Shown in pieces: positions 16,244-41,085 of a stretch of 64,000 nucleotides of DNA (position 1 is the stretch's first letter; each line of letters starts with the position of its first letter). The notes beneath the pieces were generated by a model. That model was given only the letters and a program-made list of their open reading frames with translations, searched no databases and was not told the DNA's origin. The position numbers and the translations under genes are program-made. Source of the DNA: Octopus bimaculoides (lineage: Eukaryota); assembly GCF_001194135.2 (NCBI RefSeq), contig NC_068991.1, positions 16,339,581-16,403,580 of the forward strand, in the 5' to 3' direction.

Positions 16244-16275
<32 letters not shown>

Positions 16276-16494
16276 TACATTGGTTGACAGAAAGACAACT
16301 CTTAAATAATTTATTTAGATGTCTGAATTTGAACTCAGAAGAAATGCCACTAAGCATTTTTCCCACTGCAGGAATGATTCTGCCAGCTCACTGCCTTAAT
16401 CCGCCACAAACAGTGACAACATAATTCATGTTTTTCTTCTTTTTTTTTTTACTCTCTTATAATTGTACTTTCTTTTTGTTTTGTTAATTTTCAG

Positions 16495-16600
16495 CTTTTA
16501 CGAAAAAGGAATTCTCTGATCTGCTGGCCAAAGTTGTACCTATTACAATATATATCGGGGCTGTGGCCTTAGGTATTGAGGTGCTCATTTCTTTTGTCAG
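16495..16600 (+). CDS. LMF2: LMF2 exon (AFTKKEFSDLLAKVVPITIYIGAVALGIEVLISFVR)
   Basis: ttttcag acceptor, AG|gtaatg donor, 106 nt, phase 1 to 2. FTxxxF...P.T..(I/L)G..L..E pattern of LMF2. Confidence 0.88.
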
Positions 16601-17685: not shown

Positions 17686-17785
17686 ATGTTGGAAGAATGA
17701 GAAAGGACTTTTGCGTAAACTTTTGTCTTCAGTTGGAGTGACGCTAGTTGCAGTCCTTGCTGCCATCATGTTTGCTATCAGTTTG
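17686..17785 (+). CDS. LMF2: LMF2 exon (RCWKNEKGLLRKLLSSVGVTLVAVLAAIMFAISL)
   Basis: tttcag acceptor, TTG|gtaagc donor, 100 nt, phase 2 to 0. Ends in FxISL, which precedes VP in LMF2. Confidence 0.9.
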
Positions 17786-19574
17786 GTAAGCTTTCTTCCC
17801 TTCTTTCATTATTTCCTTCTTCCTCTCTATTTCTTTTCGTTTCATGCCTTCCATTTTTCTCTCATTTCATTTATTTTTTCTTTATTTCCTTCAATGTTTA
17901 AGTGTCAGTGAATGTGCTTGTTGTAACAATAGTAGTAATAATAATAATAATAGTAGTCCACCCTGTCAGTCCATGTTATAGCTACCATAAAATGTTATTT
18001 CTATTACGGAATATTCCATATTTGTTTTCTTACATAAACTATTACCATAAGGCTTAAACAACTGACTATTTGACTGGCTGACTGTCATTTGTGGTGTTTC
18101 TTATGTCCATGTCTATTATGTAGTCTTTGGTATGTTGCCATATTCATCGTCACTTTACATCTCTTCTTCGATGCTTGCATGGGTTGGTTGGGTCTTTGCT
18201 GATGCAGCTTCTCACCTCTTATTGCAATCCGTTCATCATTTATTTCCTTCATGGAATTCAGCATCTTCAGATTATCCTTCATTGCTTCTTCATATGTCTT
18301 CCTCAGTCTTCTTTTTCTGTATCATAATTCATTTACCATTTTTCATTCAATGTCAAACTTCTCCATGCTTCCATGGTCAAACGGAGTCTATTGCGGTAGA
18401 TTTTTCTGTGGCTGGATGCGCTTCTTGTTGCTTAAACCTCACCTGTTTCTGAATAATATATTTCCCATGACCAGACGTGTTTTTTGCAGAATATTGGAAA
18501 GGAATGACAGTGCTTGTATGGCAGTGACACTCATTTACAACTATTGTGTGGTGTCAAGACAAAGAGACATAACATAAACAAACTGTCTCTCACACACAAA
18601 CACATGTATGCGTGCCTACGCACACACATCCAGGTCCATATACTGAGATCGAATTTCCAAATCTAGGTTCCAGCTGTAGAAACTTTCAGCTGTAGAAACT
18701 CTGCCAAATCAGATTGGAGCCTGGTGTAGCCTTCGGGTTCCACCAGTCCTCAGTCAAATCGTCCAACCCATGCTAGCATGGAAAGCGGACGTTAAACGAT
18801 GATGATGATGATGATGATGATCATGATTGTTTGATGCTCGTCTTCTTCACACAAGGTCAGAGGCCGTTTTGTGAAGTTATACTTTTTTTTTTCTAATTTA
18901 TCTACAACTACTATGTCCAAAGATAATCCATGACTAGAAATATTTAACTTTGCTATCAAATATTTATAACAGTCAGGACATATTTAAAATCATATCGTTG
19001 CCAGTGCCCCTGGACTGGCTCTTGTGCAGGTGGCACATAAAATACACCATCTTGAGCGTGGCCGTTGCCAGTACCGCCTGACTGGCCTTCATGCAGGTGA
19101 CACGTAAAAGCACCCACTACACTCTCTGAGTGGTTGGCGTTAGGAAGGGCATCCAGCCGTAGAAACTCTGCCAAATCAGATTGGAGCCTGGTGTTGCCAT
19201 CTGGTTTCACCAGTCCTCAGTCAAATCGTCCAACCCATGCCAGCATGGAAAGCGGACGTTAAACGACGATGATGATGATGATGATCACGATGATCACAAT
19301 ATGGTGTTCATCTGAACATGCAGGCCTGATCTCAAGGGAAACAACTTAATATTAACACATACCAGGTGTTTTGAATGAATTAAAATCAACCACTCAAAAT
19401 ACCACAAAGAATCTAGTCTAATATGCTAAGAAATCCTTCAGTCCACCATCATCCTGGATTGGTAATTTATTCTATTGATCCTGAAGAGATGAAAAGGAAA
19501 GATGACTCCAGCTGGATTTGAACTCAGAGTGCAGACGGCAAGAACAAATACTTGTAATTTTGGCATTTATTCTT

Positions 19575-19782
19575 TCTTTTACTTGTTTCAGTCATTTGAC
19601 TGTGGCCACGCTGGAGCACTGCCTTTAGTCGAGCAAATCGACCCCAGGACTTATTCTTTGGAAGCCTAGTACTTATTCTACCGGTCTCTTTTGCCGAACC
19701 GCTAAGTTATGGGTATGTAAACACACCAGCATTGGTTGTCAATCGATGTTGGGGGGGGACAAACATAGATACACAAACATAT

Positions 19783-19837
<55 letters not shown>

Positions 19838-19998
19838 TACGACGGGCTTCTTTCAGTTTCTGTCTACCAAATCCACTCACAAGGCTTTGGTCAGCCCGAG
19901 GCTATAGTAGAAGACACTTGCCCAAGGTGCCACACAGTGCGACTGAACCCAGAACCATGTAGTTGGTTAGCAAGCTACTTACCACACAGCCACTCCTG
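19575..19998 (-). mobile_element. SINE family B (tRNA head, internal (TA)n(TG)n, about 400 bp)
   Basis: CCTTGGGCAAGTGTCTTCTACTATAGCC...GTGGATTTGGTAGACGGAAACTGAAAGAAGCCC core. Copies at about 1993-2385(-), 9777-10220(+), 14160-14522(-), 24460-24883(-), 31556-31945(+), 37560-37963(-), 39130-39490(+), 41743-42118(-) and 60720-60860(-). Confidence 0.85.
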
Positions 19999-21034
19999 CG
20001 CCTATATTTAATTTTTTTTTTTTTTTTGCCCGTACAGTTTTTCTTCTTTAGCCCCAGGTCAGTCTTATTCCTGAAGGCCACCTATAATTAAAGGTATTTC
20101 TGTCACATCCACGCTATCCTTTTCTTTTTTCTGACTATATTTAGGATTACATCATCCAATGTGTCCTTCCTCTTCTTCAGACAGTAGCATGTAATTTGAG
20201 GGAGAAATAGCTCCTATTTTTAATAGATCAAGCTACCACCAAGATTTTCTATCGTTGATTCACCTTGTTGGTTATTGTTGTTGAAATAATGTTAGTGTTG
20301 TTGTTATTGTTTAACCTCATATTAGCCCTGATTTAGATTTAGCTGGCCTATTGTCAAACTTGCTTCAGCCATAACTATCACAACTTCTTTCAGACATAGT
20401 GTTTCTAGAGCCACACTATCCTATGTGTCCTTTTCAAAATGGTATGGCAGGATTTAAAGAGATTTAGCTGTTGTTTGTAGCATATCAAATGATTGCATAG
20501 AAGTCCCTACATTCGCTTTTGTTGTTGTTTTGCTCCAGGTTAATCCTTATTAAGCAGATCTATAAACAAAGAAATTCCAGTCATGCGTATCTAGTCTTTC
20601 TTTCATGCATAGTATATCTAAGACTACAGTACATGTTCTTCCTTTTTTGGTCAAGTGTTCAGATAGCCTGTGGATGGGATGGTGGAGGAGAATTTCACAT
20701 TCTATATTGCCTCAGCTTGCCTAGATGTTAGGGAGCAGGTTGATGTGTCAGACCTTTTGGGCAACGGGGGGTGGGAATGTCACTGATAATAGACCAACAC
20801 CCTTTCCATAGGAAGATATATTACTTTGAAATGGAGCTGATTATTGGCTCTCAATAGTTTATTTGGAACCTAGGAAAATTTTTTCAAAGATATTGGGTTC
20901 CTTAAATCTTCACTTCTTTTATTTTCCAAAAGCCATCACCTCTACCAAGTGATGGTAGAGGTGGGAATGTCAAAAACAATCAAAACAAAACAAAACCAAA
21001 ACCGACATAGTTGTTCTAATTTCTGTTTTTTTAG

Positions 21035-21150
21035 GTTCCCTATTCCCGTGTTGTTGGCTCAGTACACAGATCCCTTTCAGCAGATATATATGATATGTAC
21101 AGGCTGTCGACACGTTATAAGATAACCAGCTCCTATGGTCTTTTTCGCAG
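21035..21150 (+). CDS. LMF2: LMF2 alternative exon K1 (VPYSRVVGSVHRSLSADIYDMYRLSTRYKITSSYGLFR-R)
   Basis: ctgtttttttag acceptor, CAG|gtactc donor, 116 nt, phase 0 to 2, open frame. VPY...SYGLFRR matches the LMF2 VPY...YGLFRRMTG segment. Confidence 0.88.
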
Positions 21151-22500
21151 GTACTCCTATTTTTATACCTGAAAGCCTGCAAGTAATATTTTCTCTTATT
21201 CTCACCTGTTTAATTATTTCTATATTCTAGACAGAGAAAAATATTTTACATCCCTTGCGGATGTCTCCTTTTTTTTTTATTCCTCTTTATTTTAAAAGGG
21301 ACCTAACGAAAAAAGCAGTTTCTGTAATCTTAGTCAAATTAATCTATTATTATTTTAGTCACAGGTCAACCTTGATTGAGCAAAACTAATATCAAAGGTG
21401 TTCCAACAATGACCATCCCCTATTAGTTTTTTTTTCTTTCAGACATATACCTAGGACTGCATTATCTAATGTCTCCTATTTTTTGCTGAGACAGTAAAGT
21501 GTGATTTAAAGGAAATTTGGCTGCTATTTCTAGCAGTATCAAGTGATCTCCATAGAGGATCCTTCGTTGGCTCAAAATATGCCTTGCTAAACTATTTGAT
21601 GGTAGTCATATTTCGGTAACTCTATTGAGCAAACTATTTCATCACTGTATTATAGTGATTGTGACTAGCAGAACATATTTGGCGGCATTCATTATTGGAC
21701 AGCCTCTACCATTGAGCACGATATTTGATTAATATATTTTTGTGGTTGGGGAGAAGTAGGTTTAGAATTTTAGATATATGAATTGCTTATTGAAAAATAG
21801 TCTGAGGGTTTAAAGCTATTTAGCAGCTATATTGAATAAATCAAGTTTTAGCATAGAAGTTTAATGGCGGTGCCCCAGCATGGCCACAGCTCATAAGCTG
21901 AAACTAGATAAAATGAAAATGAAGTTTTTGTTGCCTTGTGAGTATTTCTTAATGTTGTTTTTTCTAATTAAATTAATTAATTAGTTACTAATAGCATTTT
22001 AATACTGCTTTTTGGCTAGGCTCATTCAACTAGTCACTCTACTATATAGTATAGCTTTATTGTTATCATTTTGACCCCAGTACTCAGCTGGTATTTACTA
22101 CATCAACCCTGAAAGAGTGAAAGGCGAAGTCAACATTGGCAGAATCTGAATGTTCTGAGGCCAAATTCTTCTGAAATTGGCTTTGCCTTTCATCCTTTTG
22201 GGGTTAATAAAGTACCAAGTGGTGGGGTGAATGTAATCAACCCCACCACCTCCAACAAATTCCTGTTTTTTGTGTCAAGATTTCAAACAGTTACCATTAT
22301 TATTATTAAGGTGAATTGTTAGCATGCTGAACATAATGCTTAGCAAATTTTGTCTTTTTGTTCTGTGTTCAGATTCCATCGAGGCTAACTTTTCTTTTCA
22401 TCCTTTTGTGGATCAAAATAAGTACCAGTTGAGACTTGGGATTGATGTAATTGACTAACCCCTCCCCCAGCCTTTTAGGCTTTGTGCCTATAGCCGAAAA

Positions 22501-22534
<34 letters not shown>

Positions 22535-24652
22535 GAAGGTGGTGAGCTGGCAGAATTATTAGCACACTGGACAGAATTCTTGGCAGTATTTTGCCTGTCA
22601 GNNNNNNNNNNNNNNNNNNNNNNNNNNNNNNNNNNNNNNNNNNNNNNNNNNNNNNNNNNNNNNNNNNNNNNNNNNNNNNNNNNNNNNNNNNNNNNNNNNN
22701 NNNNNNNNNNNNNNNNNNNNNNNNNNNNNNNNNNNNNNNNNNNNNNNNNNNNNNNNNNNNNNNNNNNNNNNNNNNNNNNNNNNNNNNNNNNNNNNNNNNN
22801 NNNNNNNNNNNNNNNNNNNNNNNNNNNNNNNNNNNATACCGCTAAGCATTTCGTCTGATGTGCTAACGTTTCTGTCAGCTTGTCGCCTTTCTGAGTTCAA
22901 ATTCTGCCAAGGTTGACTTTGCCTTTCATCCTTTCGGGGTTGATAAAATAAGTACCAGTGAACACTGGGCTCGATGTAATCGACTAGTCATTAAATTTCA
23001 GGCCTTGTGCCTTTAGTAGAAAGGATTATTATTATTATTATTGTTGTTGTTGTTATTTGAATTGACAGAGTCACTGTGTGGCTGGCTAAATTGTTCTTGA
23101 CATTTGTTCTCGCTCTTTTCATTCTGAGTTCAAATCTTACTGAGGTCAGTTTTTGTTCTTCATCCTTCCAATTCCAATAGAATAAAGTACCAGTCAGGTA
23201 CAGGGTCAGAATATTCAGCAGTTCCCCTGTCTACAAGTTTTTAGTTTTGTGCCTCTTTAAGAAATTATAAGAGAAGTGGATTGGCAGAATTGTTATATAG
23301 CTGGATCAAAATATTTTTACGGTATTTGTTCCAGCTCTTTATATTTTTAGTTCAAATCCTACCAAAGTCAAGGCCATTTTTGTCTTTCATCCTCTCAGGA
23401 TCAAATTGGTCACAATTTGCTGGCCTTGTGCCAAAATTAGAAAGAATTGATTTAATTATTATTTCTTGTGCTTCTTACAGATTTTAAAAACTGGCTTGAT
23501 TTTCATTTAAGGTCTCTCCAGGGAGCCGTGTGGTTTTGTCTTCCACTGTATGGCACTTTGAACAGGTGTCTGCTACTATAGCCTTGGGCTAAGGAATTTC
23601 TTAAGAGTGAACTTGGTAGACAGAAATTGTCAGAAGCACATCATTTGTGTGTGTGTGTGTGAATACTGTTATTTTGCTTATCACTGTTTGAGGAAAATGG
23701 TGATGGTATTTATACTCTTTGATGTATAAATATTCCCTGGGTATACTGAAGTCCTTTGGAAAAAAAAATCCTTGACTTGTAAACAGGTGAGGGTTGACAA
23801 CAGGTAGAGCATCTGGTTCTAAAATTCTGCTTCAAATCAATTCCTATCCAAGCCACGTTAGCATGGAAATGTTTGTTGAACAAACACACACTCGCACATA
23901 TATTATCATCATTGTTACTTAGTGCCCGTGTTCCCATGCTAGCATGGGTTGGATGGTTTGTCAGTATCTATCAGATTTCAAGATTGCATTGTGCTCCAAT
24001 GTCTGCCTTGGTATGGTTTCTACACCTCTATGCCCTTCCTATTGCTAACCACTTCACAGTGTGCACAGGGTACTTTTTTTTATGACATCAGCACTTGTGA
24101 GGTTGTCATGCAGCCAGCACAACTAAATAACTAAGATCCCCATTAGTTGAGTGGAACTACAGTAGAGAGGAAAGTAGCTTTATGCTATGAGATGAGGAAG
24201 AGGTTTAAGTATATGGTCTCACACACACACACAAGCATTTCATGTTACACTATGAAGCAGTACTCTGTACCGGAATTTTCAACTTAGTTCAAATATAACA
24301 GATTACTCAAATCCTTGTTAGTGTCCACATAAGTGGAGTCAAGATTGGCTAATTAGTAATGGTATCGAGTCATATTAGTTGTAATAATGAAATCAAACTA
24401 AATAGTGATATTTTGAAGTCATTTAATACATGTTTCAGGTTTGCATAATACTCTTTACTCTTTTACTTGTTTCAGTCATTTGACTGCGGCCATGCTAGAG
24501 CACCGCCTTTAGTCGAGCAAATCGACCCCAGTACTTATTCTTTGTAAGCCTAGTACTTATTCTATCGGCCTCTTTTGCCGAACCGCTGTGTTACGGGGAC
24601 GTAAACACACCAGCATCGGTTGTCAAGCGATGTTGAGGGGACAGACACACAA

Positions 24653-24724
<72 letters not shown>

Positions 24725-25490
24725 GACGGGCTTCTTTCAGTTTCCGTCTACCAAATCCACTCACAAGGCTTTAATCAGCCCGAGGCTATAGTAGAAGTCA
24801 CTTACGCAAGGTGCCACGCAGTGGGACTGAACCCGGAACTATGTGGTTCGTAAGCAAGCTACTTACCACACAGCCACTCCTGCATAATAGGAAATGTATC
24901 CATTGCATAAAATCTTCCTCAGACACACATCATCATTTTATGTTGATATTTTTTCCATGCTTGCTTTGATGGAGGTGTTGTCTCCAGTGCAATGTTTTGC
25001 TTTCTTGTTGCAGTTCTTTTTTTATCATCTTCCTTGTAACTTTCAGTATCCTGGGATCATCTTCCATCACTTTTTCCCCCTATGTCTTCCTCATTTTCTC
25101 CCCACCTTCACAAGTTCTTTCTACTTTGATCACTTTACACTTTGCCCCAGTTGTCAGCCCCATATACATCACATATTTGCACAAGTCTTCTCTGTAGATT
25201 ACATTTGATTTCTTTTACACCCAGTTTTTTTCTCTCAGCTCATTTGTCTTTCATTGTTTGTGTACATCAGCAACACACATCCAACAAAGCATGCTTATCT
25301 CATCATTTCATTGCAACCCTCACACATCCACCACAGAAATTATTGACTAGTTTTAAGGAGCTCTATGAGGATTTGAAAGAATTTATTTTGTGGGTGCTCT
25401 TCCTATTATCCATTCCTACACATTTGTGTATATTTGAGTTTGTGTATGTGTGTATAAATATATTCATGTACACACACACACATGTATGTG

Positions 25491-25521
<31 letters not shown>

Positions 25522-26439
25522 ATGTATATATACACACACATGCACATATGTGGATGTGTTTGTATGAGTGTGTCATTTTGTCGAGTGTTTGAATATCAAA
25601 CATGCTTAACTGTTGCATTATGGGATATCAGTTACTCAAACCTCTCTCACATTGACATAAACATAAAACCCTGAGTAATTCTTAATATTGTTCTCATGAT
25701 ATATATATATATATATATAGTTCACAGATGAGATTCAGCGATTCTTCATATAGAAGACACTTAGTAGTGCTCAAAAGATTCAAACTTAGACTCTGATGTC
25801 TTTACAGGGGATCGATTCCACAGAGTAAAGAATGGCTATCAGGGGGATAAAGTTGAACGGGTATAGAGGCAATTATGTGGATAAATAAATTAGACACGTC
25901 AAATATATCAAATACAAAATATGTGTATATGTATACAAGCAAAATGGGTGAAAGCAAAAGATCGAAACTTTCTGGTGATGAATTTTTATGTATAAATATG
26001 TAGATATTTATATTAACAACTTACACAAACAACAGAGAAAATTAAAGGAGTTGTTTGTACTCTGTGTAAATTGGACAAATTAATGTAAATTTCTACATAT
26101 TTATGCATAAAAATTTGTCACCTGAATGTTTTCACCTTTTGCTTTCTCTTGTTTTGCAGGTATACATATTTCGTATTTGATGTATTTAATATATTTGATA
26201 TGTCTAATTTGTTTATCATAATTGCCTCTTTCTCTATACACACACACACACACACACATATGTACAAATATAATGTTTTGGTCCTAAAATCACCCACTAA
26301 GTTCTGTTTGGATTCTGATATCAACCAAATTCATTTTTTTTTTTTTGGAGGGTGATTTTATTGTTTGTTTCTTCCTTAGTATAAGATCTTGTGTCTCATT
26401 AGAGTCTCCATGAATTTGTAAATGTTGTTTTTTTTCAAG

Positions 26440-26555
26440 GTGCCTCTCTCCTACCTCCATAAGGAGGCTACAGCGACTCTGTGGCCTGAAGTAAAAGAAA
26501 TCCATGCCACAATAGCGCCATTTCGAATCACTTCTCCTTACGGCTCCCTGGAAAG
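26440..26555 (+). CDS. LMF2: LMF2 alternative exon K2 (VPLSYLHKEATATLWPEVKEIHATIAPFRITSPYGSLE-R)
   Basis: tttttttcaag acceptor, AAG|gtacaa donor, 116 nt, phase 0 to 2, open frame. VP at the start, LW at 14-15 and ITSxYG at 30-35, collinear with K1 and K3. Confidence 0.78.
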
Positions 26556-26909
26556 GTACAACAGAGTAGAGTGTAGTTGAGAGAGATTGTAGACCATAAT
26601 AACTATAATGATAATAATAATAATAATAATAATTAACAGTTATTTTTATACTAATTATCACCAGTGTTTTTTTTGTTTGTTTTGCTGTGTTCAGTGAAAA
26701 CCTAAGCCCTTCTCTTCAAACAATTATTGGACACATGTGCTTACATGTGTGTGCACACATACGTACACACACACACGTACACACACTCCAAAATAAAATG
26801 TCATTGGATTGCATTTTTGTGTAGTTTATTCAATAGTTTTACTTTATTTTTCCCCCATTTTTGGTTTTTATGTTTTCTGTATTTTAATATATATATATAT
26901 ATATATATA

Positions 26910-27303
26910 TCACATGTGATCATGTGGCCAACCAGGCTATCAGATGTTATACATCGCTGATCACTATGTACTTTGCATTGTTTTTAGCCTTCAGATGATT
27001 CCAACCCGGTGGCTAGGCGAGCAGGTCAACATCCACTGCCCGATCGAAGGGTCACTAAAGCGATGTGAAATGCAGTGTTTTGCTCAAGAGCACAACATGC
27101 TGCCCAGTCAGGGAATCAAACCCATGAACTACCGATTATGAATGCAATAGCCTAACCACTAGGCCACGTGCCTTCACATGTGGTTGGCCTGCTCGTCTAG
27201 CCAGCGGGCTGGCATCATTTGAAGACTAAATTGATGCAACAGCGAATTGTGACCAGTTATGTGTAACATGTGATAGCCTGGTCAGTCACGTGATCACATG
27301 TGA
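26910..27303. mobile_element. Foldback/MITE with ~121-bp imperfect inverted arms and a central SINE head
   Basis: Arms 26910-27030 and 27183-27303 align as reverse complements. TA on both flanks. Confidence 0.8.
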
Positions 27304-27423
27304 TATACATATAATATATATATATATATAAATAATAAATTGATAGAAAAGACAACAAAAGAAAGAAAGAGACCTCGATATTATGTAAATAGAGGAATTT
27401 ATCTGTAAAAATATGTGACAATT

Positions 27424-27617
27424 ATTCGGTAGCCATGATAAAACTCCGAGTTTCGGATGCCGGGGCAGAAACCCACGCCGCCATCTCTTCAGTTAACTGG
27501 CCCTTTGTTTAACGGTCATTTTCATAGGAACTTTCAATGGCCAGATAACTGAAGAGATAGCAGCGTGGGTTTCTGCCCCGGCATCCGAAACTCGGAGTTT
27601 TATCATGGCTACCGAAT
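27424..27617. repeat. 79-bp inverted repeat (3 mismatches) with a 36-nt loop, ending at an assembly gap
   Basis: ATTCGGTAGCCATGATAAAACTCCGAG... at 27424-27502 is mirrored at 27539-27617. Confidence 0.85.
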
Positions 27618-28465
27618 NNNNNNNNNNNNNNNNNNNNNNNNNNNNTATGTAAATAATAAATATATATATATGTAAATAATAAATATATATATATAATATG
27701 CTTATGAGTGAGTGTTACCATCGTACAAGTAGTGTCCATCATTGAAAATCTTTTGTGAAAACATGTCCAACCTGGAGAAATATTACTTTATTTGGAAACA
27801 AGTGAGGGTTGATGACGATCAGTGTATCCAGCTGTATAAAATCTGCCTCAATGGATTCTGTTTGACCAATGTGAGCATAGAAAAATGGCCATTGAAATGA
27901 TGATGACATACAAACACACCTATATACAGATATGCATGCAAACATGTATACATATACATACAGTTGATCACACATACACACACACACACATGTATCAGTG
28001 CATGATCTAACACACTCACAAAAGGAGTTTGGGTGGGAGGTGTGTGTTTGTCTTGGTTACTCCAATTGTGTATGCATACTTTAGTTCATAGTTGGTCCCT
28101 GTGATTCTGGCCATGCTGGAGCATTTTCTTCTAACACTTGCTTTTGTTTAGTTTTGTTTTGTTTTGTTTGTTTTCTGTTTGCTTTTTGTTTGTTGGCAGA
28201 AATTTTGATTAATTTGCTTAAAAGAAGGTGAAAAAAAATAAGGTAATTAAATCAAGTAATTAAAAAAAAACAGTACTTTGTTTATTCTACAGATCTTTAG
28301 TTGAGTGACACTTCTCACTCATGTTCTTTTTAGTTGAGTGACGCTGCTCACTCATATTTTTTTCTCTTTTCTGTTAATATTTTACTTGCTTAAAGTATGA
28401 TCTGGAGATAATTAACCAATTCTAGGGAAGCCAAAAGTGCTCTCTTCAGATATATAATGGTAATG

Positions 28466-29293
28466 GGGAATTGGAGTAAATGGTAGAGCATCAAACAAAA
28501 TGCTTTGTGGTATTTAGTTATGGTTACCTGCCTTCTGATTTCAAATCCTACCAGACTCAGTTTTGCTTTACATCCTCCCAGGGTCAATAAAATGAAGTAC
28601 CAATTAAGTAATAGGGATCAATATAGTCAGTTAAGGCCTTGTGCATATAGTGAAAATTATTATTATTATTATTATTGTTAGCACATTGGACAAAATACTT
28701 AGCAGCATTTTGTCCATCTTTACATTCTGAGTTCAAATTTCACTAAGGTCAACTTTACGTTTCATCCTTTCGGAGTTGATGTAATTGACTCCTCCCCACC
28801 CCACTGGAATTTCAGGTCTTGTGCCTATAGTAGAAAATATTATTATTATTATTATGAGGCAGCAAGCTGGCAGAATCATTAGCATGCTGGATGAAATGTT
28901 TAGTGTATTTCAGCTGTCACTACATTCCGAGTTCAAATTCTGCATAGGTCGATTTTGCCTTTCATTCTTTCAGGGTTGATAAATTAAGTACCAGTAAAAT
29001 GCTAGGGTCAATGTAATCAACTAATCCCCTCTCCACAAATTTCAGGCCTTGTGCCTTTAATAGAAAGGATTATTATTATTATTAAAGTGGCACACTGGAC
29101 AAAATGCTTTGTGGAATTTTTTCTGGCTCTACGTTCTAAGGTTCAAATTCTGTTGTGGCTAATTTTGCCGTTCATCCATTTGTGGTTGATAGAATAAATA
29201 CCAGTTGTACACTAGGGTCAATGTAATCAGCTTACTATTTCCCCAAAAATTTCAGGTCTTGTACTTATAGTAGAAAGGATTATTGTTATTATT
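28466..29293 (+). mobile_element. Four head-to-tail degenerate family D SINEs joined by (ATT)n
   Basis: Four repeats of the GTTCAAATT...TTTCATCC...GGCCTTGTGCCT...AGAAAGGATTATTATT pattern. Confidence 0.75.
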
Positions 29294-29339
29294 CAACTTG
29301 ACTCCAGTTTGGTCTTGTTTCTGGTAGAATTTATATGGG

Positions 29340-30690
29340 TAGCAGGTTACTATCTGTAACCTTAGACATAACAAGCTTTCAATAATCTTTCAAGTGCACA
29401 ACCCTTCTGATAATCTTCCCTGTTCTTAAGAAGCAAACTTTCTGTTCCAATCTGCTTCAATCATTTGTCTACATCATAACTCACAGTCCTTAATGCACCA
29501 ATTATTGCTGATACAACCATTATAGTTTTCATAATCCAAATTCTTGCAATCTTATATTTTAATGGATTTTAAAAAAAATTTTTCGTTGTCTTTCTTTACA
29601 ATCCTGGAATCAAATGGACATGATGGATCAATTAGTCAGCAACTTCTCTTTTCCTTGTTATGTCTGGTTTATTATTTTCTATCGTCTTGTCCATTTGAAA
29701 TGTGAAAATCCCATAAAATCTTGCATTTTTCCAACTCTACCAAGTACTTCCATCTTCAAGCTCCATTTCTTGTATTGTCCCTGAGCCAACTTAGGACATT
29801 CTGTAACGATGTGTGCCATTGTTTCATCCCAAATTCCACAAACTCTACGTTTTGTTGACACCTTCTCCATGTGTACATATTTCCTCAAGTTGTTCTTTAA
29901 TGCTTGGTTTTCAGCTGCTATAATAAGTCTCTCTGTTTCTGTTTCAAATTGCCCTTTTTTCAACCAATCCCAGTTTTTTCCCCCCCACATACATTATCAG
30001 TGGCTTTCCAACAGACCGTGCAATGGTTTCTCTTCAGTCTGTTTGACATAATCTCTGTAAATTTCATTTTTGTCTTTTTCTCTTTTTCCACACTTGATTG
30101 CTTATTTTTTATTCGCTGCCTTTAGTAATTTCTCTATGCTGTTCTGTAAATATTCTAGTACAGTTTTTCTTTCCATCTGTATACACTCTTCCGCGGCAGT
30201 TAAGCCTCTTCCATCCTGGTATCTCTTCAAGTACAACCATGTCATCGTCTTGCCTGTCTTAACCAGTTAATATCAGCTTTCGGATGGTGGGTTCCATACA
30301 TTCATTGTCAACAGCTTTCTAGTTTTTTCTGTCAAGTTTCTGTATGTTGCTTTGGGTCCAGTTCATAAGTCCAGCTCCATATCTGATAACTGGTACTGCT
30401 CTTGCGTTTATTGCTTCAATAACCTTTTTTGAATTCAACTTTGACTTTAATATTTTTCTCACTATTTGTGATTTGTTTCATCTCTTCATGTTTTATTTCA
30501 TCTCCTTCCAGTCTTCCCAAATACTTATTCCACTGTCCTTTCTCGTCTGCTTTTGTTGTTTTTCCATTTGGCATTTCAATTACCTGGCTTCCTTCAACTC
30601 TTCCTCGTTTCTTTATCACTATAGCGCACTTTTCAATCCCAAATTCCATACCTCTGCTTGTTGTCTTTTCATATAAAGCTTTATTTTATC
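29340..30690 (-). mobile_element. R4/Dong-clade non-LTR retrotransposon, degenerate 3' part
   Basis: RT end MEFGIEKCA...KYLG, CCHC-like knuckle RVCGIWDETMAHIVTECPKLAQ, and C-terminal VVSAIIGALRTV. Contains frameshifts and stops. Confidence 0.8.
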
Positions 30691-30767
30691 CATAAAAAGA
30701 TTATTTATCTAACCATATCCATTTCCCAAATCATAAGCCATTTTAATTTATCATCATTATTATTATA

Positions 30768-30809
<42 letters not shown>

Positions 30810-32176
30810 GGGCAGTGTTATCAGTTTTGATAGAAAATCATGCAAGATACTTTGCTATATTCAGTTTATGTCTCAAGTTCAAATCCTGACAGTTTTTAGC
30901 TACTTTTGCCTTCCATCATTCTGGGGTTGATACAATCAAGTTCAAGTCAAGGTACTAAGGCTGATATATTCAACTACATCCAGCTCTTGGACATTGTGCC
31001 TATGTTAGAATTATCATTATTATTATTAGGACAGAACTAGTAGAACATCAAAGGAAAAGCTTTGCAGTATTTAATTGAGTCCCTTTAGGTTCTGGGTTGA
31101 AATTCTGATTAAAAAAGATGTTTTTTGATTATTATTTTTGTTGCTTTCCATCCTTCTGTGGTCATAAATACCAGGTAGGTAGGACTGGGGACTATATAAT
31201 GTATTTTCCTTCTTAGAATTCATGCTATTGTTCTGATGCTGAAAACTATCATTTATACAACTTTTTTTTTTTTCAACCTTCTTTTAATATTGATTTGTTT
31301 TTGTTTATGAATCTTTTAATGTTTTTGGGTCAAATGCTTAAAACATCTATGTTGTTATTGAGTTGTTAATGAAATTATTTTATGGATTGACTAATTAACT
31401 TAAACTTTAGAGATGAAAGATTTGTTTTGGTATTTATATTCAATGCAACATACCAAACTTATCTCACAGAATCCTTAAATGGTTTTCAAAAAACAAGGAA
31501 AAACTGTGGAACTATTCACTGTATTTCACAGACAAACCCTACCATTTTAATTAGGCACAGGTGTGGCTATGTGGTTAAGAAGCTGGCTTCCCAATCATAT
31601 GGTTTCAGGTTCAGCCCCACTGTGCAGCACTTTGAGCAAATATTTTCTACTTTAGCCCCAGGCTAAGCAAAACCTTGTAAGTGGATTTGGTAGACAGAAA
31701 CTGAAAGAAGCCCACCATATATATATAGATACATGTATGTATGTATTTGCGTGTCTGTGTTTTTTCCCCCCTGCCACCTTCGCTTGACATCCGATGTTGG
31801 TGTGTTTACATCCCTGTAACTTAGCAGTTCAGCTAATGAGACTGATAGAATAAGTACTAGGCTTACAAAGAATAAGTCCTGGGGTTGATTTGTTCGACTA
31901 AAGGTGGTGCTCCAGCATGGTCGCAGTCAAATGACTGAAACCAGTAAAAAAAAAAAAAGAATATATATANNNNNNNNNNNNNNNNNNNNNNNNNNNNNNN
32001 NNNNNNNNNNNNNNNNNNNNNNNNNNNNNNNNNNNNNNNNNNNNNNNNNNNNNNNNNNNNNNNNNNNNNNNNNNNNNNNNNNNNNNNNNNNNNNNNNNNN
32101 NNNNNNNNNNNNNNNNNNNNNNNNNNNNNNNNNNNNNNNNNNNNNNCCAGTACCATTTGTCAAGTAGTGGTGGGGG

Positions 32177-32210
<34 letters not shown>

Positions 32211-32579
32211 GCATGCATGCAATGTACCTGTGCACACATTTAAAGGGCTTCTGAACAGTTTCCTTCAACCAAATGTTACTCACAAGGCTTTAGGTCAAGT
32301 TTATGGTAGAACACTCTTTGTTTAATGCATCATGCACTAAGCATCGAAATGGAGCTGTGTGATTGCAAAGCAAGCTTTTTGACCACATGACCCCTGCCAA
32401 AAATACATAAATAATAAAAATAAATTCAAAGGAAAATGATAAAGAATCTTTCATCTCTAAACAATAAATGTAATGGTAGGCTTATAGTCGTAATAATTAG
32501 AATCATAACCTAAATATTTTTTCTTAGTTTAGTGTGCTGTTTGCCTTGTTTCTCTACTGACTCATGTTTCTGATTTCAG

Positions 32580-32695
32580 GTACCGTATACAGCCATAGAT
32601 GTTGGCAGTAATTCTAAGTTACCAGCACGCTTAAAGATATTACACAGCAGATTAGACAGACTTGAAATAACAAGCCATTATGGTCTATTCAGAGT
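32580..32695 (+). CDS. LMF2: LMF2 alternative exon K3 (VPYTAIDVGSNSKLPARLKILHSRLDRLEITSHYGLFR-V)
   Basis: gatttcag acceptor, GT|gtaaga donor, 116 nt, phase 0 to 2, open frame. VPY...ITSHYGLFR. Confidence 0.88.
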
Positions 32696-33025
32696 GTAAG
32701 ACCAGCTAACATTTCCTCCCTTTTAACACTCTTCTGCCCACTATACTGCCTTCTACCGTACCTCTTTTCCACTCCTCCTTCCTACTACAGCTATTATCTA
32801 ATATGGCAACTTTCTGGAAAAGTGTGTATTTTGTATGGGTGTGTTGTTGTTTTGTGTCTTGTTGTTGTGTATATGTTGTATTTGCGTGTCTTTTGCTGTA
32901 TTTGTTTTGTTTGTGTGTTTTGCTGTAATTGTGTGTATGTGTGTTGCCGTGTGTGTGTGTGTATACCTTTGATGTGTTTGTATAAACTATACTGTATGAT
33001 GTGTGGTAGTTGTTGCATGTATGTG

Positions 33026-33079
<54 letters not shown>

Positions 33080-33782
33080 AACGTAAATATTGTATATGTT
33101 GTATGTATTTTTGACTTCGTAGTTGTGTGTGCGTCTGTACCTTTGTTGTTTGTAGAAACTATACTGTTTGATGTGTGGTCGTTGTTGCTGTTGCGTGTAT
33201 GTATATATATGTGTGTGTGTGTGTGTATATACGGAAATATTGCATATGTTGGATGTATTTTTGATTTGGTAGTTGTGTGTTTCCATACATTTATGTTGCT
33301 TTTCCCCATTCCTTTTATCCTTTACTATTTTTCGTAAGAAAAGATACTCATTTACATACATATTTCTATGTGAAACATACTGGATACAGGTAAGGCTGTG
33401 TGTTTAAGAAATTTACTTTGCAACCGTTTGTTTCTAGTTTCAATACCACTCTACAGCACTTTGGACAAGTGCCTTTTACTCTGGTCTCAACCTGACCAAT
33501 ATTTTAGGAGCGAAGTAGCTTGTTTGAAACTATACAGGAGCGATGAGCTGGCAGAAACGTTAGCACGCCGGGCGAAATGCTTAGTGGTATTTCGTCTGCC
33601 GCTATGTTCTGAGTTCAAATTCCGCTGAGGTCGACTTTGCCTTTCATCCTTTTGGGGTTGATAAATTAAGTACCAGTTACGCACTGGGGTCGATGTAATC
33701 GACTTAAACCGTTTGTCTGTCCTTGTTTGTCCCCCCTGTGTTTAGCCCCTTGTGGGCAATAAAGAAATAAGAAACTATACAG

Positions 33783-34054
33783 AAGCGCTTCCCAAAGTGG
33801 ATGGTACTGCCCTGTTCTCCTGGGGGACAATGGAAATATCCAGTGGGGTGTTGAAGAAAAGTTGGGTGATAATGGGGTGACCAAAGGGTTGGGGCGGGAG
33901 CAGGGCAATGAAAATAATGGGGTTGATTAGATTAAGTTTTATTTGTGAAATACAGTTGTTTTGAATTTGCTGCAGAAAGTGGTTTATGTTTGTGGTGGTG
34001 AGTGGGGTTGAGGTACGAAGGGGGCAGCAGCTTGAAAAAGTTTGGGAACCACTG
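33783..34054. mobile_element. hAT-type MITE, 272 bp
   Basis: 8-bp TSD CTATACAG on both sides (33775-33782 and 34055-34062). Degenerate TIR (C/A)AG(C/T)G(C/G)TTCCCAAA. Confidence 0.8.
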
Positions 34055-34617
34055 CTATACAGTGACCTAGTGATCTGGGCATTGTGTTCATTAGCATAAT
34101 GCAACAGGATCGTGTGATTCAATTCCTGGCCCAGCAGGCCATTGTTTCTTCAAGCAAAATACTTAAATTTCTCATTGCTCTAGTTTACTCAGCTGAGATC
34201 ATATCCTGGCATCAGTGCTGGTGCTGTCCTTTCTGTCTATTCCCCGGTTGTCACATCCTTGATATTTTGCTTGGTAAAGGTTTGAGGTCTCAATGATAGG
34301 TTTTGTTTCATGTCTTAAATTTCTTGTCTAAAACCTCTACAGATTTAGCTATAAGATCTTTGTCCTCAACATACTAGAACTTCCACAGATAGACAGTCCT
34401 CCTCTGTTTTGACTTGGAGAACTACAACAAATAAGTCTCGGCTGAGAACTGAGCCTTGTTAGACTTCTACTTGCATGTTAAATTTGTTGTTAAACTCATT
34501 ACTGACTCTCACTTTGTCGACTCTGTATCAATGTGGCTTGTACATCTCTTACAAACCATTCAGCTACCCATAATTCCCTTAGTGATTACCAGGCTGTAGA
34601 GTGTGGAACTCTGTTAA

Positions 34618-34835
34618 CCCTTTTGTTACCATATTCCTTTTGAAATGTATTGCCTTTGTTTCAATTAATGTTGAAAATGTCAAAAATTTAGTAAAACAAT
34701 TTTGTCATTATGAAGCTGGTATTTGAAACATAAATTATCATGGAATTTTAATGGAAAGGTTTTACTGGGATCAGTTAAGTATGAAATTTATATTATAAAA
34801 CCAGGATCAGTCTCATTGGATTGGTATCAAAAGGG
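34618..34835. mobile_element. piggyBac-type MITE
   Basis: TTAA|CCCTTTTGTTACC ... GGTATCAAAAGGG|TTAA. Relatives at 42887-43108, about 39810-40021, 54561-54788, and left ends at about 46227 and 46754. Confidence 0.85.
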
Positions 34836-35029
34836 TTAAAGGCTTTCTCTAAGTTGACAGATGCTAGGTATAGAGACTTACTCCTAGTTAAATATTTTTG
34901 TATTTGTCTCAATAGAAAGATAATATTTGTTGTGCTTTACTGGAACAAAGTCAAATTATATCTCATTTAAGTTAAATTATTTCTGTTCAATTATGCTATA
35001 ATTCTTTCTGTAACTTCATAACCTGAGCT

Positions 35030-35670
35030 GTCTTTCTGTTGCAACTGTAGTTGGTCCTCCATGAAATATTTCTGCTGCCTTTGTAGCGGCTGACATTGTC
35101 GCTGCTTCATTAGTCACCGGGAACGGCATCTTCCTGTGTGCTGCCTGATTGATTATGTGAGTGATTATCATGCGGCTGACTTTACCAGATATTTTAAGTG
35201 TCTCTTTGAGAATAATTTTGTTGGTCCAGTTGTCTTCAATGCTTTTGTATTCTTCATTACACTTGCAAACCATACTGCTATCAATTTATACAGTTGGTCC
35301 CACTGTTGGGTCTACCTACAGTAGACCATCTCTCTTCCATTTGTTTGGCCTTATTCAATATAATGCTTCCATGCCTCTTTCTTTTTGGTATCAGTAAGGA
35401 AATGTGGCCTTTATCATTCCATACATACTTCTCACTAATTATATCGTGATAACCTTTGGTACACAACCTTGCATTCCAGAATATCTCCTGCTTCTGGTTC
35501 TTACACTGCATAAAATGTGCAGACCACTTATTTTCTGCTTCCTGTCCTTGCTAAATATAGACGTTTCTCTTAGTTGTTCTCTACTGCAATCTGAACTCAC
35601 CACTTCTACCCATGTTTTCTTTAGTCTTCCTCTTCCACCATGTCTTGCATCATTCGTCCTGTGAATCACA
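35030..35670 (-). mobile_element. Degenerate RTE-clade LINE fragments
   Basis: KKEAWKHY...GPTV.IDSSMV...ETLKISG (EN-RT linker) and RGRGRLKKTWVEVVSSD (ORF C-terminus). Confidence 0.65.
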
Positions 35671-37179
35671 TATATACTATCACAGTTTCTCTCTTGTGCA
35701 ATATATTAGTCTATCTACCTACCTATTTATCTCTCTCTCTCTCTCTTTCTCTCTGTATATATATTCACCTCTTATTTATTTTTTATTTTCATCTGGTTAG
35801 GGACCTTACTCCTTTCTTTGGGAGGGGTGTCAGAGGCAGGTAAGACAGTGTTACAACCATTATCAGCATAGCAATCCTTTCCATGCAGCCTTCATTGTTG
35901 TGACTGCTTTAAATGTTAGTATTTCAGTTGTCCTCTAGATCTTAGTTAATAGTGTCTAGTAATCAACATAATTGCAGAGTATTACTTCTCTGCTTAAGAA
36001 AGGCAGCTGATTTCAGTATAAGTTAAAGAGCACTCATTAGACCTTTCACATTAATGATCCACGTTGCTTCAATCCCTTGCAGTAACCACACTTCACCCTT
36101 TATCTTCCAATCAACTCTATTGATTAGTCATCATTGTTCATACACTGTTTCCTTTAGCTGAATGCAGCACACTTTAAATGTAGGCACTGGAGACATATCC
36201 TCTAGTTTGTAATTTATAAACATCTAATTGGTCAGAGTTGGAAGCAGTTCAACTCCTGTTTTTGTTGTCTGTGCATAACACTGGTCTGCCCTGTCCAAGC
36301 ATATCTGTGACATGTACTAGATGTGGTCACCCAGTCCAATGCTTCATACATAACCTGATTTAGTCTTTTGGAGACCATACTGTGCAATCCCAGCATGCAC
36401 AGTGGCAGTCTCAACATCTTTAATTTGCTTACTGTCTGTTCTTGTATGATCATTAGTTTCAGTGTGGAGGCGCAATGGCCCAGTGGTTAGGGCAGCGGAC
36501 TCGCGGTCATAGGATCGCGGTTTCGATTCCCAGACTGGGCGTTGTGAGTGTTTATTGAGTGAAAACACCTAAAGCTCCACGAGGCTCCGGCAGGGGATGG
36601 TGGTGAACCCTGCTGTACTCTTCCACCACAACTTTCTCTTACTTCCTGTTTCTGTTGTGCCTGTAATTCAAAGGGTCAGCCTTGTCACACTGTGTCACGC
36701 TGAATATCCCCAAGAACTACGCCACATGCACGTTAATTTCACGAGCAGGCTGTTCCGTTGATCGGGTCAACTGGAACCCTCGACGTCATAAGCGACCGAG
36801 TGCCAACAACAACAATTAGTTTCAGTGGTGCTTGCAGCATAAATCTTTTTCTTTCTTTCTTTTTTTTTTTTTATCTCTCAGTTAAAAGTGAAGGCAGAAC
36901 CACTGACTCTGTATGGGGCTCCCCATTACCGGTAGGAGAGATAGATGGAGAAAGAAAATTAGCCTCAAACTGGATACTTGGCCTGAATTCTTGCAGCGGA
37001 AATGCGGTCCATTCAAGGAACCCAAGGTACCAGGTGATAGTGTTAAGTTGGGTAACAGATTAAGTTTACCAACTGAATAGATCATAATGGGACTTGAACT
37101 CCAAACGCAAAGAACCAGAACAAACACCACAAGGCATTCAACCTAATTTCTTACAGTTCCACCAGTTCATCTCCCTAGA

Positions 37180-37768: not shown

Positions 37769-37805
<37 letters not shown>

Positions 37806-40963: not shown

Positions 40964-41085
40964 GATGACTGGTGTTGGTGGCCGACCTGAGGTTATTATT
41001 GAAGGGAGCAATGATATGAAAGCATGGAAAGAATACCATTTTCTTTACAAACCAGGAAATGTTTCTCGAAGTCCACCAATTGTCA
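40964..41085 (+). CDS. LMF2: LMF2 exon ([40 protein letters not shown])
   Basis: Long pyrimidine tract plus tttag acceptor, A|gtaagt donor, 122 nt, phase 2 to 1. MTGxGGRPEVxxEGS and YKPGN are hallmarks of the LMF C-terminal luminal domain. Confidence 0.96.

What the first reader, a model, noticed from the sequence alone, without database searches (positions are those of the whole stretch)
21035..32695. Triplicated, frame-locked mutually exclusive exon cassette in LMF2
Seen: between the exon ending 17785 (phase 0) and the exon starting 40964 (phase 2) are three exons, K1 21035-21150, K2 26440-26555 and K3 32580-32695. All are exactly 116 nt, phase 0 to 2, stop-free and AG/GT bounded, and they align without gaps (VP...ITSxYG). 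They are highly diverged in the middle, yet length, frame and splice sites are kept, which argues for purifying selection on each. Since 116 mod 3 = 2, including 0, 2 or 3 copies frameshifts, so only single inclusion gives protein. Known: the segment matches the single VPY...SYGLFRR stretch of vertebrate LMF2, at the start of the ER-luminal C-terminal domain; tandem exon duplication underlies mutually exclusive splicing in Dscam and Mhc. Inference: three LMF2 isoforms with swapped luminal modules, possibly for different clients or tissues. I know of no such cassette described for LMF genes. None of the three exons appears in the supplied ORF track.
Basis: partly seen in the sequence, partly recalled or inferred. 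Interest (0 to 1): 0.9.

Follow-up and report, generated by a model that had tools for sequence, protein, structure and literature searches.

The report
Three alternative exons in octopus LMF2
The octopus gene LMF2 (lipase maturation factor 2) carries three interchangeable 116-base exons, one used per mRNA; the feature is real and conserved, but public gene annotations already model it, so it is not a new discovery.

Summary
K1 (21035-21150), K2 (26440-26555) and K3 (32580-32695) are each 116 nt, AG/GT-bounded and open in phase 0. They are the only three LMF-like matches in the window. Including 0, 2 or 3 copies gives an early stop codon.

The window is Octopus bimaculoides LMF2. The spliced C-terminal 272 residues are 100% identical to RefSeq XP_014771059. 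RefSeq already lists isoform X3 (K1), X4 (K2), X2 (K3) and X1 (K3 plus a 39-nt microexon at 35801-35839). O. sinensis and O. vulgaris carry the same set, and the O. vulgaris splice forms were added from transcript assemblies.

Gap-free loci of O. sinensis, O. vulgaris and Argonauta hians all show UP-K1-K2-K3-microexon-DOWN with no fourth copy, so the assembly gaps are harmless. dN/dS against Argonauta is 0.09, 0.13 and 0.24 for K1, K2 and K3, similar to the flanking exons.

The cassette expands an older two-exon pair. Annotated isoforms of oyster, scallops, Littorina, Patella, a chiton, Lingula and Lineus differ only in this segment.

No paper in the searched library describes it. It is a real, conserved mutually exclusive exon cluster, already annotated, with unknown function.

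The parts
17686..17785 (+). Constitutive upstream exon (UP), 100 nt, ends in phase 0. It encodes ...CWKNEKGLLRKLLSSVGVTLVAVLAAIMFAISL, a hydrophobic stretch just before the alternative segment.
   Evidence: Identical to residues 376-408 of XP_014771059.
21035..21150 (+). Alternative exon K1, 116 nt, AG..GT. Its last two bases AG plus the G of DOWN give Arg. Used in O. bimaculoides RefSeq isoform X3 (XP_014771060).
   Evidence: 0/116 nt differences from O. sinensis; dN/dS 0.09 against Argonauta.
26440..26555 (+). Alternative exon K2, 116 nt, AG..GT, junction Arg. It carries YGSLE in place of the near-invariant YGLFR. Used in RefSeq isoform X4 (XP_014771061).
   Evidence: Two synonymous differences from O. 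sinensis; dN/dS 0.13 against Argonauta, where the motif is YGVLE.
32580..32695 (+). Alternative exon K3, 116 nt, AG..GT. Its last two bases GT give a Val junction. It is the family-like (type B) copy. Used in RefSeq isoforms X2 (XP_014771059) and X1.
   Evidence: dN/dS 0.24 against Argonauta. Type-B HMM beats type-A by 20 bits.
35801..35839 (+). 39-nt cassette microexon (MIC), AG..GT, frame-neutral. It inserts (V)DLTPFFGRGVRG(R) between a K exon and DOWN. Annotated only together with K3, in isoform X1 (XP_014771058, 660 aa).
   Evidence: Conserved in O. sinensis, O. vulgaris and Argonauta hians.
40964..41085 (+). Constitutive downstream exon (DOWN), 122 nt. It needs two bases from the preceding exon and encodes (R/V)[40 protein letters not shown].
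   Evidence: (Pfam LMF1_C).
22602..22835 (.). Assembly gap in the K1-K2 intron.
   Evidence: Orthologous intervals in three gap-free assemblies hold no extra exon.
27618..27645 (.). Assembly gap in the K2-K3 intron.
31970..32146 (.). Assembly gap in the K2-K3 intron, about 430 nt upstream of K3.

Best explanation
What it is. This is the Octopus bimaculoides LMF2 gene. Between two constitutive exons lie three tandem, anciently duplicated 116-nt exons, and exactly one is spliced into each productive mRNA.

What it produces. The result is three 647-residue isoforms that differ only in 38 residues. These follow the hydrophobic stretch encoded by UP and form the start of the Pfam LMF1_C domain. The segment includes a predicted helix and the conserved ITSxYG motif.

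How exclusivity probably works. Each exon is 116 nt (3n+2). Skipping all three, or including two or three, shifts the frame and creates an early stop codon. Such mRNAs cannot make protein and are presumably removed by nonsense-mediated decay. Which exon is chosen is probably set by trans-acting splicing factors acting on the exons and their immediate flanks.

Extra variation. A frame-neutral 39-nt microexon downstream of K3 adds a fourth annotated variant.

Origin. The cassette is an octopod expansion of an older two-exon (type A / type B) alternative pair found across Lophotrochozoa.

Shown versus inferred. Shown: the anatomy, the frame consequences, the annotated isoforms, conservation and purifying selection. 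Inferred: decay of mis-spliced forms, how the exon is chosen, and any functional difference between isoforms.
For: Anatomy and frame logic.

Gene identity: the spliced product is 272/272 identical to XP_014771059, with Pfam LMF1_C.

Annotated single-inclusion isoforms: K1, K2 and K3 each appear alone in isoforms of O. bimaculoides, O. sinensis and O. vulgaris. The O. bimaculoides isoforms are identical outside residues 411-447. The O. vulgaris splice forms derive from PASA transcript assemblies.

Conserved layout: the order is the same, each K is 116 nt with AG/GT, and there are no gaps in O. sinensis, O. vulgaris and Argonauta hians.

Purifying selection: dN/dS against Argonauta is K1 0.09, K2 0.13 and K3 0.24, compared with UP 0.14 and DOWN 0.18. 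Between paralogous copies, identity by codon position runs 2 > 1 > 3. There is no homology in the flanking introns.

Deeper origin: RefSeq isoforms of Crassostrea, Argopecten, Pecten, Littorina, Patella, Liolophura, Lingula and Lineus differ only in this segment. The genomic order is A then B, both 116 nt, in Patella and Lingula. Four metagenomic contigs show the same layout.
Against: I could not look at reads or junction counts. Tissue usage, relative abundance, and the absence or decay of double-inclusion transcripts are therefore not shown for O. bimaculoides itself.

RefSeq X-isoforms are model predictions. Their transcript support is inferred from how the pipelines work, not inspected.

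K2 replaces the near-invariant YGLFR with YGSLE, so its product may not be a conventional LMF2.

No conserved intronic regulatory element or docking/selector pairing was found, so the choice mechanism is unknown.
Confidence: 0.9

Rival explanations
1. Only one copy (K3, the family-like one) is a real exon. K1 and K2 are decaying pseudo-exons that annotation pipelines picked up.
For: K3 scores best against the family profile. It is the form seen in Argonauta isoform X1 and in two other cephalopod transcript contigs. K2 lacks the YGLFR motif.
Against: K1 and K2 keep their length, frame and AG/GT in four octopod genomes. Their dN/dS is 0.09 and 0.13, with dS of about 1-2. Against O. sinensis they show 0 and 2 nucleotide changes. 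The flanking introns have lost all similarity. Isoforms carrying each are annotated in three species, one of them from transcript assemblies.
Confidence: 0.03
2. The triplication is an assembly artefact. Allelic or paralogous contigs, especially the isolated K2 contig, were scaffolded into one locus.
For: K2 sits in a 4.8-kb block bounded by gaps on both sides.
Against: The copies are only 24-37% identical, so they are not alleles. The order UP-K1-K2-K3-MIC-DOWN is present with zero N in O. sinensis, O. vulgaris and Argonauta hians.
Confidence: 0.01
3. Mutual exclusivity is actively enforced by competing RNA structures, with one docking site pairing with a selector next to each exon as in Dscam exon 6. 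It is not only filtered afterwards by frameshift and decay.
For: This mechanism is common in arthropod clusters of duplicated exons (general knowledge; PMC6071210 listed). An (AC)n/(GT)n inverted pair flanks K3.
Against: A screen of the UP-proximal and DOWN-proximal introns found nothing above shuffled controls: 12/14 pairs, against 12-13 in the shuffles. The only collinear blocks conserved between Octopus and Argonauta in the 23-kb interval are the exons with about 20 nt of flank and the microexon. The flanking dinucleotide repeats were not tested for conservation in Argonauta.
Confidence: 0.1
4. The K2 isoform is not an equivalent chaperone. It could be a regulatory, inactive or dominant-negative form, because it alters the invariant YGLFR motif.
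For: In about 49 distinct family sequences, L36, F37 and R38 are each conserved in more than 90%. K2 has SLE there, and Argonauta K2 has VLE. The deviation is therefore conserved rather than decay.
Against: There are no functional data. The rest of K2 is family-like (39 bits) and strongly constrained (dN/dS 0.13).
Confidence: 0.2

Closest known systems
RefSeq/GenBank isoform models of octopus LMF2 (O. bimaculoides XP_014771058-61; O. sinensis XP_029643119/20/22 and XP_036363236/7; O. vulgaris CAI9730487-90)
   Same: This is the same object. X3/X4/X2 in O. bimaculoides are the K1, K2 and K3 single-inclusion products, and X1 is K3 plus the microexon.
   Different: The database entries are unannotated isoform lists. 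None states that these are tandem-duplicated, frame-locked, mutually exclusive exons, or gives their evolutionary depth.
Two-exon (type A / type B) alternative pair at the same position in LMF2 of other Lophotrochozoa (Crassostrea, Argopecten, Pecten, Littorina, Patella, Liolophura, Lingula, Lineus)
   Same: The exon position, the 116-nt length (checked in Patella and Lingula genomic DNA and in four metagenomic contigs), the phase and the order are the same. The upstream copy gives an Arg junction and the downstream copy a non-Arg junction. Isoforms differ only in this segment.
   Different: Those species have two copies and octopods have three. K3 is clearly type B. K1 and K2 occupy the type-A position and have its AG junction, but sequence cannot assign them. 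The two HMM sets disagree and the NJ trees are unresolved.
Frame-locked mutually exclusive exon pairs whose mis-spliced products are removed by NMD (for example FGFR2 IIIb/IIIc; from general knowledge)
   Same: Exon length is not a multiple of three. Double inclusion or skipping gives a premature stop.
   Different: Here there are three exons. NMD of the aberrant forms is not demonstrated.
Arthropod clusters of duplicated exons controlled by docking-site/selector RNA pairing (Dscam1, Mhc, 14-3-3 zeta; general knowledge, PMC6071210)
   Same: A tandem array of homologous exons of equal length, with one chosen per mRNA.
   Different: No docking or selector complementarity and no conserved deep-intronic elements were detected. 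The introns are 3-8 kb.
Vertebrate, insect and echinoderm LMF2/LMF1 genes
   Same: The same protein family (Pfam PF06762 plus PF25179) and the same 38-residue VP...SYGLFR segment.
   Different: These have a single copy of the segment. In many of those genomes it is fused to the next exon, with no intron at GLFR|RMTG.

Membership tests
Mutually exclusive exon cluster from tandem exon duplication | Two or more adjacent exons lie between the same pair of constitutive exons. | tested here: met
   K1, K2 and K3 lie between UP (17785) and DOWN (40964). The order is the same in three gap-free relatives.
Mutually exclusive exon cluster from tandem exon duplication | The exons are homologous to one another, with equal length, equal phase and compatible splice sites. 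| tested here: met
   Each is 116 nt, runs from phase 0 to 2, and is AG/GT bounded. They align without gaps, and all three hit a family HMM at E<=2e-10.
Mutually exclusive exon cluster from tandem exon duplication | Exactly one exon of the cluster is present in each mature mRNA. | tested here: inconclusive
   All annotated isoforms in three Octopus species contain exactly one K. The O. vulgaris forms come from PASA transcript assemblies. No reads were inspected, and absence of multi-K transcripts is not shown.
Mutually exclusive exon cluster from tandem exon duplication | Each copy is maintained by purifying selection across species. | tested here: met
   dN/dS is 0.09, 0.13 and 0.24 against Argonauta. 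The copies are intact in four genomes.
Frame/NMD-enforced exclusivity | Exon length is not divisible by three, so zero or multiple inclusion produces a premature stop. | tested here: met
   116 = 3n+2. Stop codons appear within about 10-20 codons of the frameshift in all wrong combinations.
Frame/NMD-enforced exclusivity | Aberrant transcripts are degraded by NMD. | not testable with these tools
   This needs NMD inhibition plus RT-PCR or RNA-seq.
Docking-site/selector RNA-structure control (Dscam type) | One intronic docking sequence is complementary to a selector next to every variable exon and is conserved across species. | tested here: not met
   There is no complementarity above shuffles near the exons. 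No intronic blocks are conserved between Octopus and Argonauta beyond about 20 nt of exon flank. The screen was limited: ungapped 14-mers within about 350 nt of the exons.
Steric or U2/U12 incompatibility mechanisms of exclusivity | The intron between alternative exons is too short to splice, or the splice-site classes are mismatched. | tested here: not met
   The introns are 5.3 and 6.0 kb. All sites are GT-AG with U2-type pyrimidine tracts.
Lipase maturation factor family (LMF1/LMF2) | Pfam LMF1 (PF06762) and LMF1_C (PF25179) domains, with orthology to annotated LMF2. | tested here: met
   PF25179 is hit with each K variant at 54-61 bits against a cut-off of 34. The product is 100% identical to XP_014771059 over 272 aa. 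Full-length homologues carry both domains.
Lipase maturation factor family (LMF1/LMF2) | Near-invariant SYGLFR(R)MTG motif at the start of LMF1_C. | tested here: inconclusive
   K1 and K3 keep it. K2 has YGSLE, and Argonauta K2 has YGVLE.

The most novel reading that the evidence does not exclude
LMF2, an ER membrane protein of poorly understood function, carries an alternative-exon switch that predates the split of molluscs, brachiopods and nemerteans. The switch swaps the first 38 residues of its C-terminal domain. Octopods expanded it to three exons before Octopus and Argonauta diverged. One octopod version (K2) has replaced the otherwise invariant YGLFR motif with YG(S/V)LE and kept that change under strong constraint. 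This would mean functionally distinct chaperone isoforms, differing in clients, tissues or regulatory role. As far as the searched literature shows, none of this has been described.
Probability: 0.55. Interest if true: 0.45.

Novelty: already known. Interest (0 to 1): 0.3.

Why it matters
As a discovery it adds little. The three single-inclusion isoforms are already in RefSeq for this species, and mutually exclusive exons born by tandem duplication are a well-known kind.

What is worth keeping is the context assembled here.
- The switch is deeply conserved across Lophotrochozoa.
- Each octopod copy is under purifying selection as strong as the constitutive exons.
- One copy rewrites an otherwise invariant motif.

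LMF2's molecular role is poorly defined. Naturally swapped, selected variants of one 38-residue segment point to a functionally critical surface. They also offer ready-made constructs for testing client specificity.

Tried and rejected
**Short protein queries.** Queries of 112-115 aa against the big protein database returned only fragments of 200 aa or less and no cephalopod. I first read this as absence of the species. A 541-aa query then returned the full-length named proteins. The tool appears to favour hits of comparable length.

**Apparent second exon duplication at 3733-3960 / 6454-6534.** This came from overlapping tblastn hits. It is rejected: the hits are intron read-through next to a 29-nt microexon.

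**Orthology of K1/K2 with type A or type B.**
- HMMs from metagenomic contigs favoured the a type.
- HMMs from named RefSeq isoforms did not.
- NJ bootstraps were low.
- The question is left unresolved.

**Transcript pairs with different K.** I looked for pairs of transcript contigs from one species carrying different K exons among 80 metagenome loci and found none.

**RNA-level control.**
- Docking/selector screen: no signal above shuffles.
- Flank homology between copies: microsatellites only.
- Intron footprinting among metagenomic relatives: too diverged.

**Searches with no result.**
- Pfam on the 38-aa peptides alone: no hits.
- Rfam on the window: nothing.
- PDB sequence search: nothing.

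**Structure prediction.** A Schistosoma fragment was modelled instead (mean pLDDT 80). In it the K-equivalent segment is coil, then helix, then the YGLFRRMT helix, followed by the first beta strand. It is used only descriptively.

**Locus look-ups.** P0237 and P0244 failed, because only the longest product of a gene is indexed.


Full report
**1. The observation**

Each is 116 nt and follows a pyrimidine tract plus AG. Each is followed by GT and is open in phase 0.

The upstream constitutive exon is 17686-17785 and ends in phase 0. The downstream one starts at 40964 and needs two bases from the preceding exon. Its donor is at 41086, so it ends at 41085.

The peptides align without gaps at 24-37% identity. 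They share VP at the start and ITSxYG near the end.

An HMM built only from homologues outside the window finds exactly three significant matches in all six frames of the 64 kb: K3 50 bits, K1 40 bits and K2 39 bits. The next best is 9 bits at E=0.36.

With any single K the reading frame runs on through exons 43481-43700, 45751-45862 and 47284 onwards to a natural stop. With none, two or three copies a stop codon appears within about 10-20 codons of the frameshift.

**2. The assembly gaps**

The three gaps inside the finding are all intronic.
- UP and K1 lie in one uninterrupted block (16244-22601).
- K3, a microexon and DOWN lie in another (32147-41917).
- K2 is alone in 22836-27617, so within this window its placement rests on scaffolding.

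Relatives settle the question. The orthologous loci are O. sinensis (L088, CM016869), O. vulgaris (L089, OX597824) and Argonauta hians (L087, BAAFZT010000086). All contain UP-K1-K2-K3-microexon-DOWN in the same order. Every K is 116 nt and AG/GT bounded, with zero N between UP and DOWN. An HMM scan finds no fourth K-like exon in O. sinensis or O. vulgaris, and only three significant hits across the whole Argonauta locus. A hidden extra copy in the O. bimaculoides gaps is therefore unlikely.

**3. What the locus is**

Short queries to the protein database returned only fragments. A 541-residue query assembled from the window's exons returned full-length named proteins.

The window-derived C-terminal 272 residues with K3 are 272/272 identical to residues 376-647 of XP_014771059.1. 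That entry is Octopus bimaculoides lipase maturation factor 2 isoform X2.

Cluster members show what RefSeq already lists for this species:

| Isoform | Accession | Content |
|---|---|---|
| X3 | XP_014771060 | K1 |
| X4 | XP_014771061 | K2 |
| X2 | XP_014771059 | K3 |
| X1 | XP_014771058 (660 aa) | K3 plus 13 extra residues |

The four proteins are identical outside the K segment and that insert.

The insert comes from a 39-nt AG/GT microexon at 35801-35839. It encodes DLTPFFGRGVRG and is frame-neutral.

O. sinensis (X4, X3, X2, X1) and O. vulgaris (CAI9730487-90) carry the same set. The O. vulgaris genome paper states that alternative splicing forms were added by two rounds of PASA updates from Iso-Seq and RNA-seq assemblies (PMC10700109). 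Those four forms should therefore rest on transcripts. I did not see the reads themselves.

**4. Selection**

Between the three paralogous copies, nucleotide identity is highest at second codon positions (0.50-0.63) and lowest at third (0.11-0.34). The flanking introns share nothing but microsatellites. Together these indicate old duplicates kept by selection on the protein.

The table gives Nei-Gojobori results between orthologues, O. bimaculoides against Argonauta.

| Exon | dN/dS | dS |
|---|---|---|
| UP | 0.14 | 1.57 |
| K1 | 0.09 | 2.2 |
| K2 | 0.13 | 0.97 |
| K3 | 0.24 | 0.66 |
| DOWN | 0.18 | 0.48 |

Against O. sinensis, which diverged about 34 My ago according to PMC10700109, the counts are small:
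- K1 has no change in 116 nt.
- K2 has two synonymous changes.
- K3 has three synonymous and two non-synonymous changes.

Each copy is therefore constrained about as strongly as the constitutive exons.

K2's unusual YGSLE stands in place of YGLFR, whose three differing residues (L, F, R) are each conserved in more than 90% of about 49 distinct family sequences. It recurs as YGVLE in Argonauta. It is a conserved peculiarity, not decay.

**5. Deeper origin**

RefSeq isoform pairs of eight other lophotrochozoans have equal length and differ only in this 38-residue segment. They are Crassostrea virginica, Argopecten irradians, Pecten maximus, Littorina saxatilis, Patella vulgata, the chiton Liolophura sinensis, the brachiopod Lingula anatina and the nemertean Lineus longissimus.

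- One form (type A) joins DOWN through an Arg codon.
- The other (type B) joins through Val, Met, Thr or Ser.

In the genomic DNA of Patella (L090) and Lingula (L091) the two exons are both 116 nt and AG/GT bounded, in the order A then B. Four uninterrupted metagenomic contigs of unidentified animals (L002, L003, L011, L024) show the same layout.

Leave-one-species-out HMMs recover the type in 15 of 16 cases, so A and B are orthology groups across phyla.

Octopod K3 is type B. It scores 20 bits higher on the B model, has a Val junction and is last in the order. K1 and K2 sit in the type-A position and end in AG like type A. Their sequences cannot be assigned: two HMM sets disagree and the NJ trees are unresolved. 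At least one extra duplication happened before Octopus and Argonauta diverged.

Many other animals, including vertebrates, insects and echinoderms, have a single copy. In many of them it is fused to the DOWN exon.

**6. How it probably works**

The frame lock is shown: only single inclusion is productive. Removal of mis-spliced RNAs by nonsense-mediated decay is inferred from general knowledge of such exons.

Other known ways of enforcing exclusivity do not fit:
- The introns are 5-6 kb, so steric hindrance is excluded.
- All sites are U2-type GT-AG.
- A screen for a docking sequence complementary to all three exon flanks gave nothing above shuffled controls.
- Between Octopus and Argonauta the only collinear conserved blocks in the 23-kb interval are the exons with about 20 nt of flank and the microexon. 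Everything else that matches is dispersed repeat.

Exon choice is therefore most likely set by trans-acting factors acting on the exons and their immediate flanks. I rate that as inference.

K1's complete identity to O. sinensis, and a type-B exon in two unnamed relatives that is more conserved than the neighbouring constitutive exon (96% against 82%), are what one expects of alternative exons carrying splicing signals. The numbers are small.

**7. What the segment is in the protein**

Pfam places the start of LMF1_C at the ITSSYGLFR end of the K exon. The first 29 or so residues are the variable link from the hydrophobic stretch encoded by UP.

An AlphaFold model of a Schistosoma LMF2 fragment (mean pLDDT 80) shows the equivalent stretch as coil, then a 10-residue helix, then a short turn. 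The YGLFRRMT helix follows and leads into the first beta strand.

No solved structure exists. The luminal location is taken from published LMF1 topology (my knowledge) and was not tested here. Functional differences between isoforms are untested.

**8. Novelty and verdict**

Full-text searches found no paper linking LMF genes to mutually exclusive or duplicated exons. The only LMF2 splicing mention is an alternative 3' site in mouse hair cells.

The isoforms themselves, however, are public in RefSeq and GenBank for this very species and its relatives, and the kind of feature is textbook. I therefore rate it as already known at the database level and of modest interest.

The part not in the literature I could search has three elements: the lophotrochozoan-wide A/B switch, its expansion to three in octopods, and the conserved YG(S/V)LE variant. 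It is a reasonable lead for anyone studying LMF2.

Noticed in passing
window 35801-35839 (+): A 39-nt frame-neutral cassette microexon lies between K3 and DOWN. It encodes DLTPFFGRGVRG, is used in RefSeq isoform X1 together with K3, and is conserved in O. sinensis, O. vulgaris and Argonauta. It would also stay in frame after K1 or K2, but no such isoform is annotated.
   Followed up: partly
window 6506-6534 and about 9587-9614 (+): Two further microexons of LMF2, of 29 nt (VGQTFFYFQW) and about 27 nt (ALNYHFESQ). The second was located only by a back-translated pattern, and its exact splice sites were not checked.
   Followed up: partly
window 32177-32222 and 33013-33076: An (AC)n(AT)n tract about 360 nt upstream of K3 and an (AT)n(GT)n tract about 320 nt downstream form a 34-nt perfect inverted pair bracketing the exon. 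It could loop K3 out in the pre-mRNA, or it could be chance microsatellites. Conservation was not tested.
   Followed up: no
window 18750-18821, 19118-19285, 19848-19919, 24732-24805, 37812-37883: Copies of short dispersed repeats in the LMF2 introns match several places in the Argonauta LMF2 introns at 71-89% identity. This is a repeat family shared by distant octopods.
   Followed up: no
window 58530-59552 (-): A 340-codon open reading frame encodes a very hydrophobic, multi-pass-membrane-like protein downstream of LMF2 on the opposite strand. It has no Pfam match at E<=0.01.
   Followed up: partly
L090 7218-11122 (-) and L091 7457-12059 (-): In both Patella vulgata and Lingula anatina, a roughly 1100-residue LRR-Roc-COR protein gene lies on the opposite strand inside an LMF2 intron. 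This nested arrangement is conserved between a mollusc and a brachiopod. It was not looked for in octopus.
   Followed up: no
P0379 versus P0285 (Lingula anatina LMF2 isoforms X1 and X2), residues 199-248: These two equal-length isoforms differ only in a 50-residue stretch of the N-terminal LMF1 domain (16 differences). This suggests a second, independent mutually exclusive exon pair in Lingula LMF2.
   Followed up: no
L021 295-410 versus L024 1376-1491: In two unnamed related animals the type-B exon is 96% identical (4 synonymous and 1 conservative change). The 210 nt of intron upstream is 80% identical, yet the constitutive DOWN exon is only 82% identical. The alternative exon is more conserved than its constitutive neighbour.
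   Followed up: partly
window, UP to DOWN interval (17786-40963): The interval is 23.2 kb here but 31.9 kb in O. sinensis and 32.8 kb in O. vulgaris. Either repeat content differs, or the gapped O. bimaculoides scaffold underestimates the introns.
   Followed up: no
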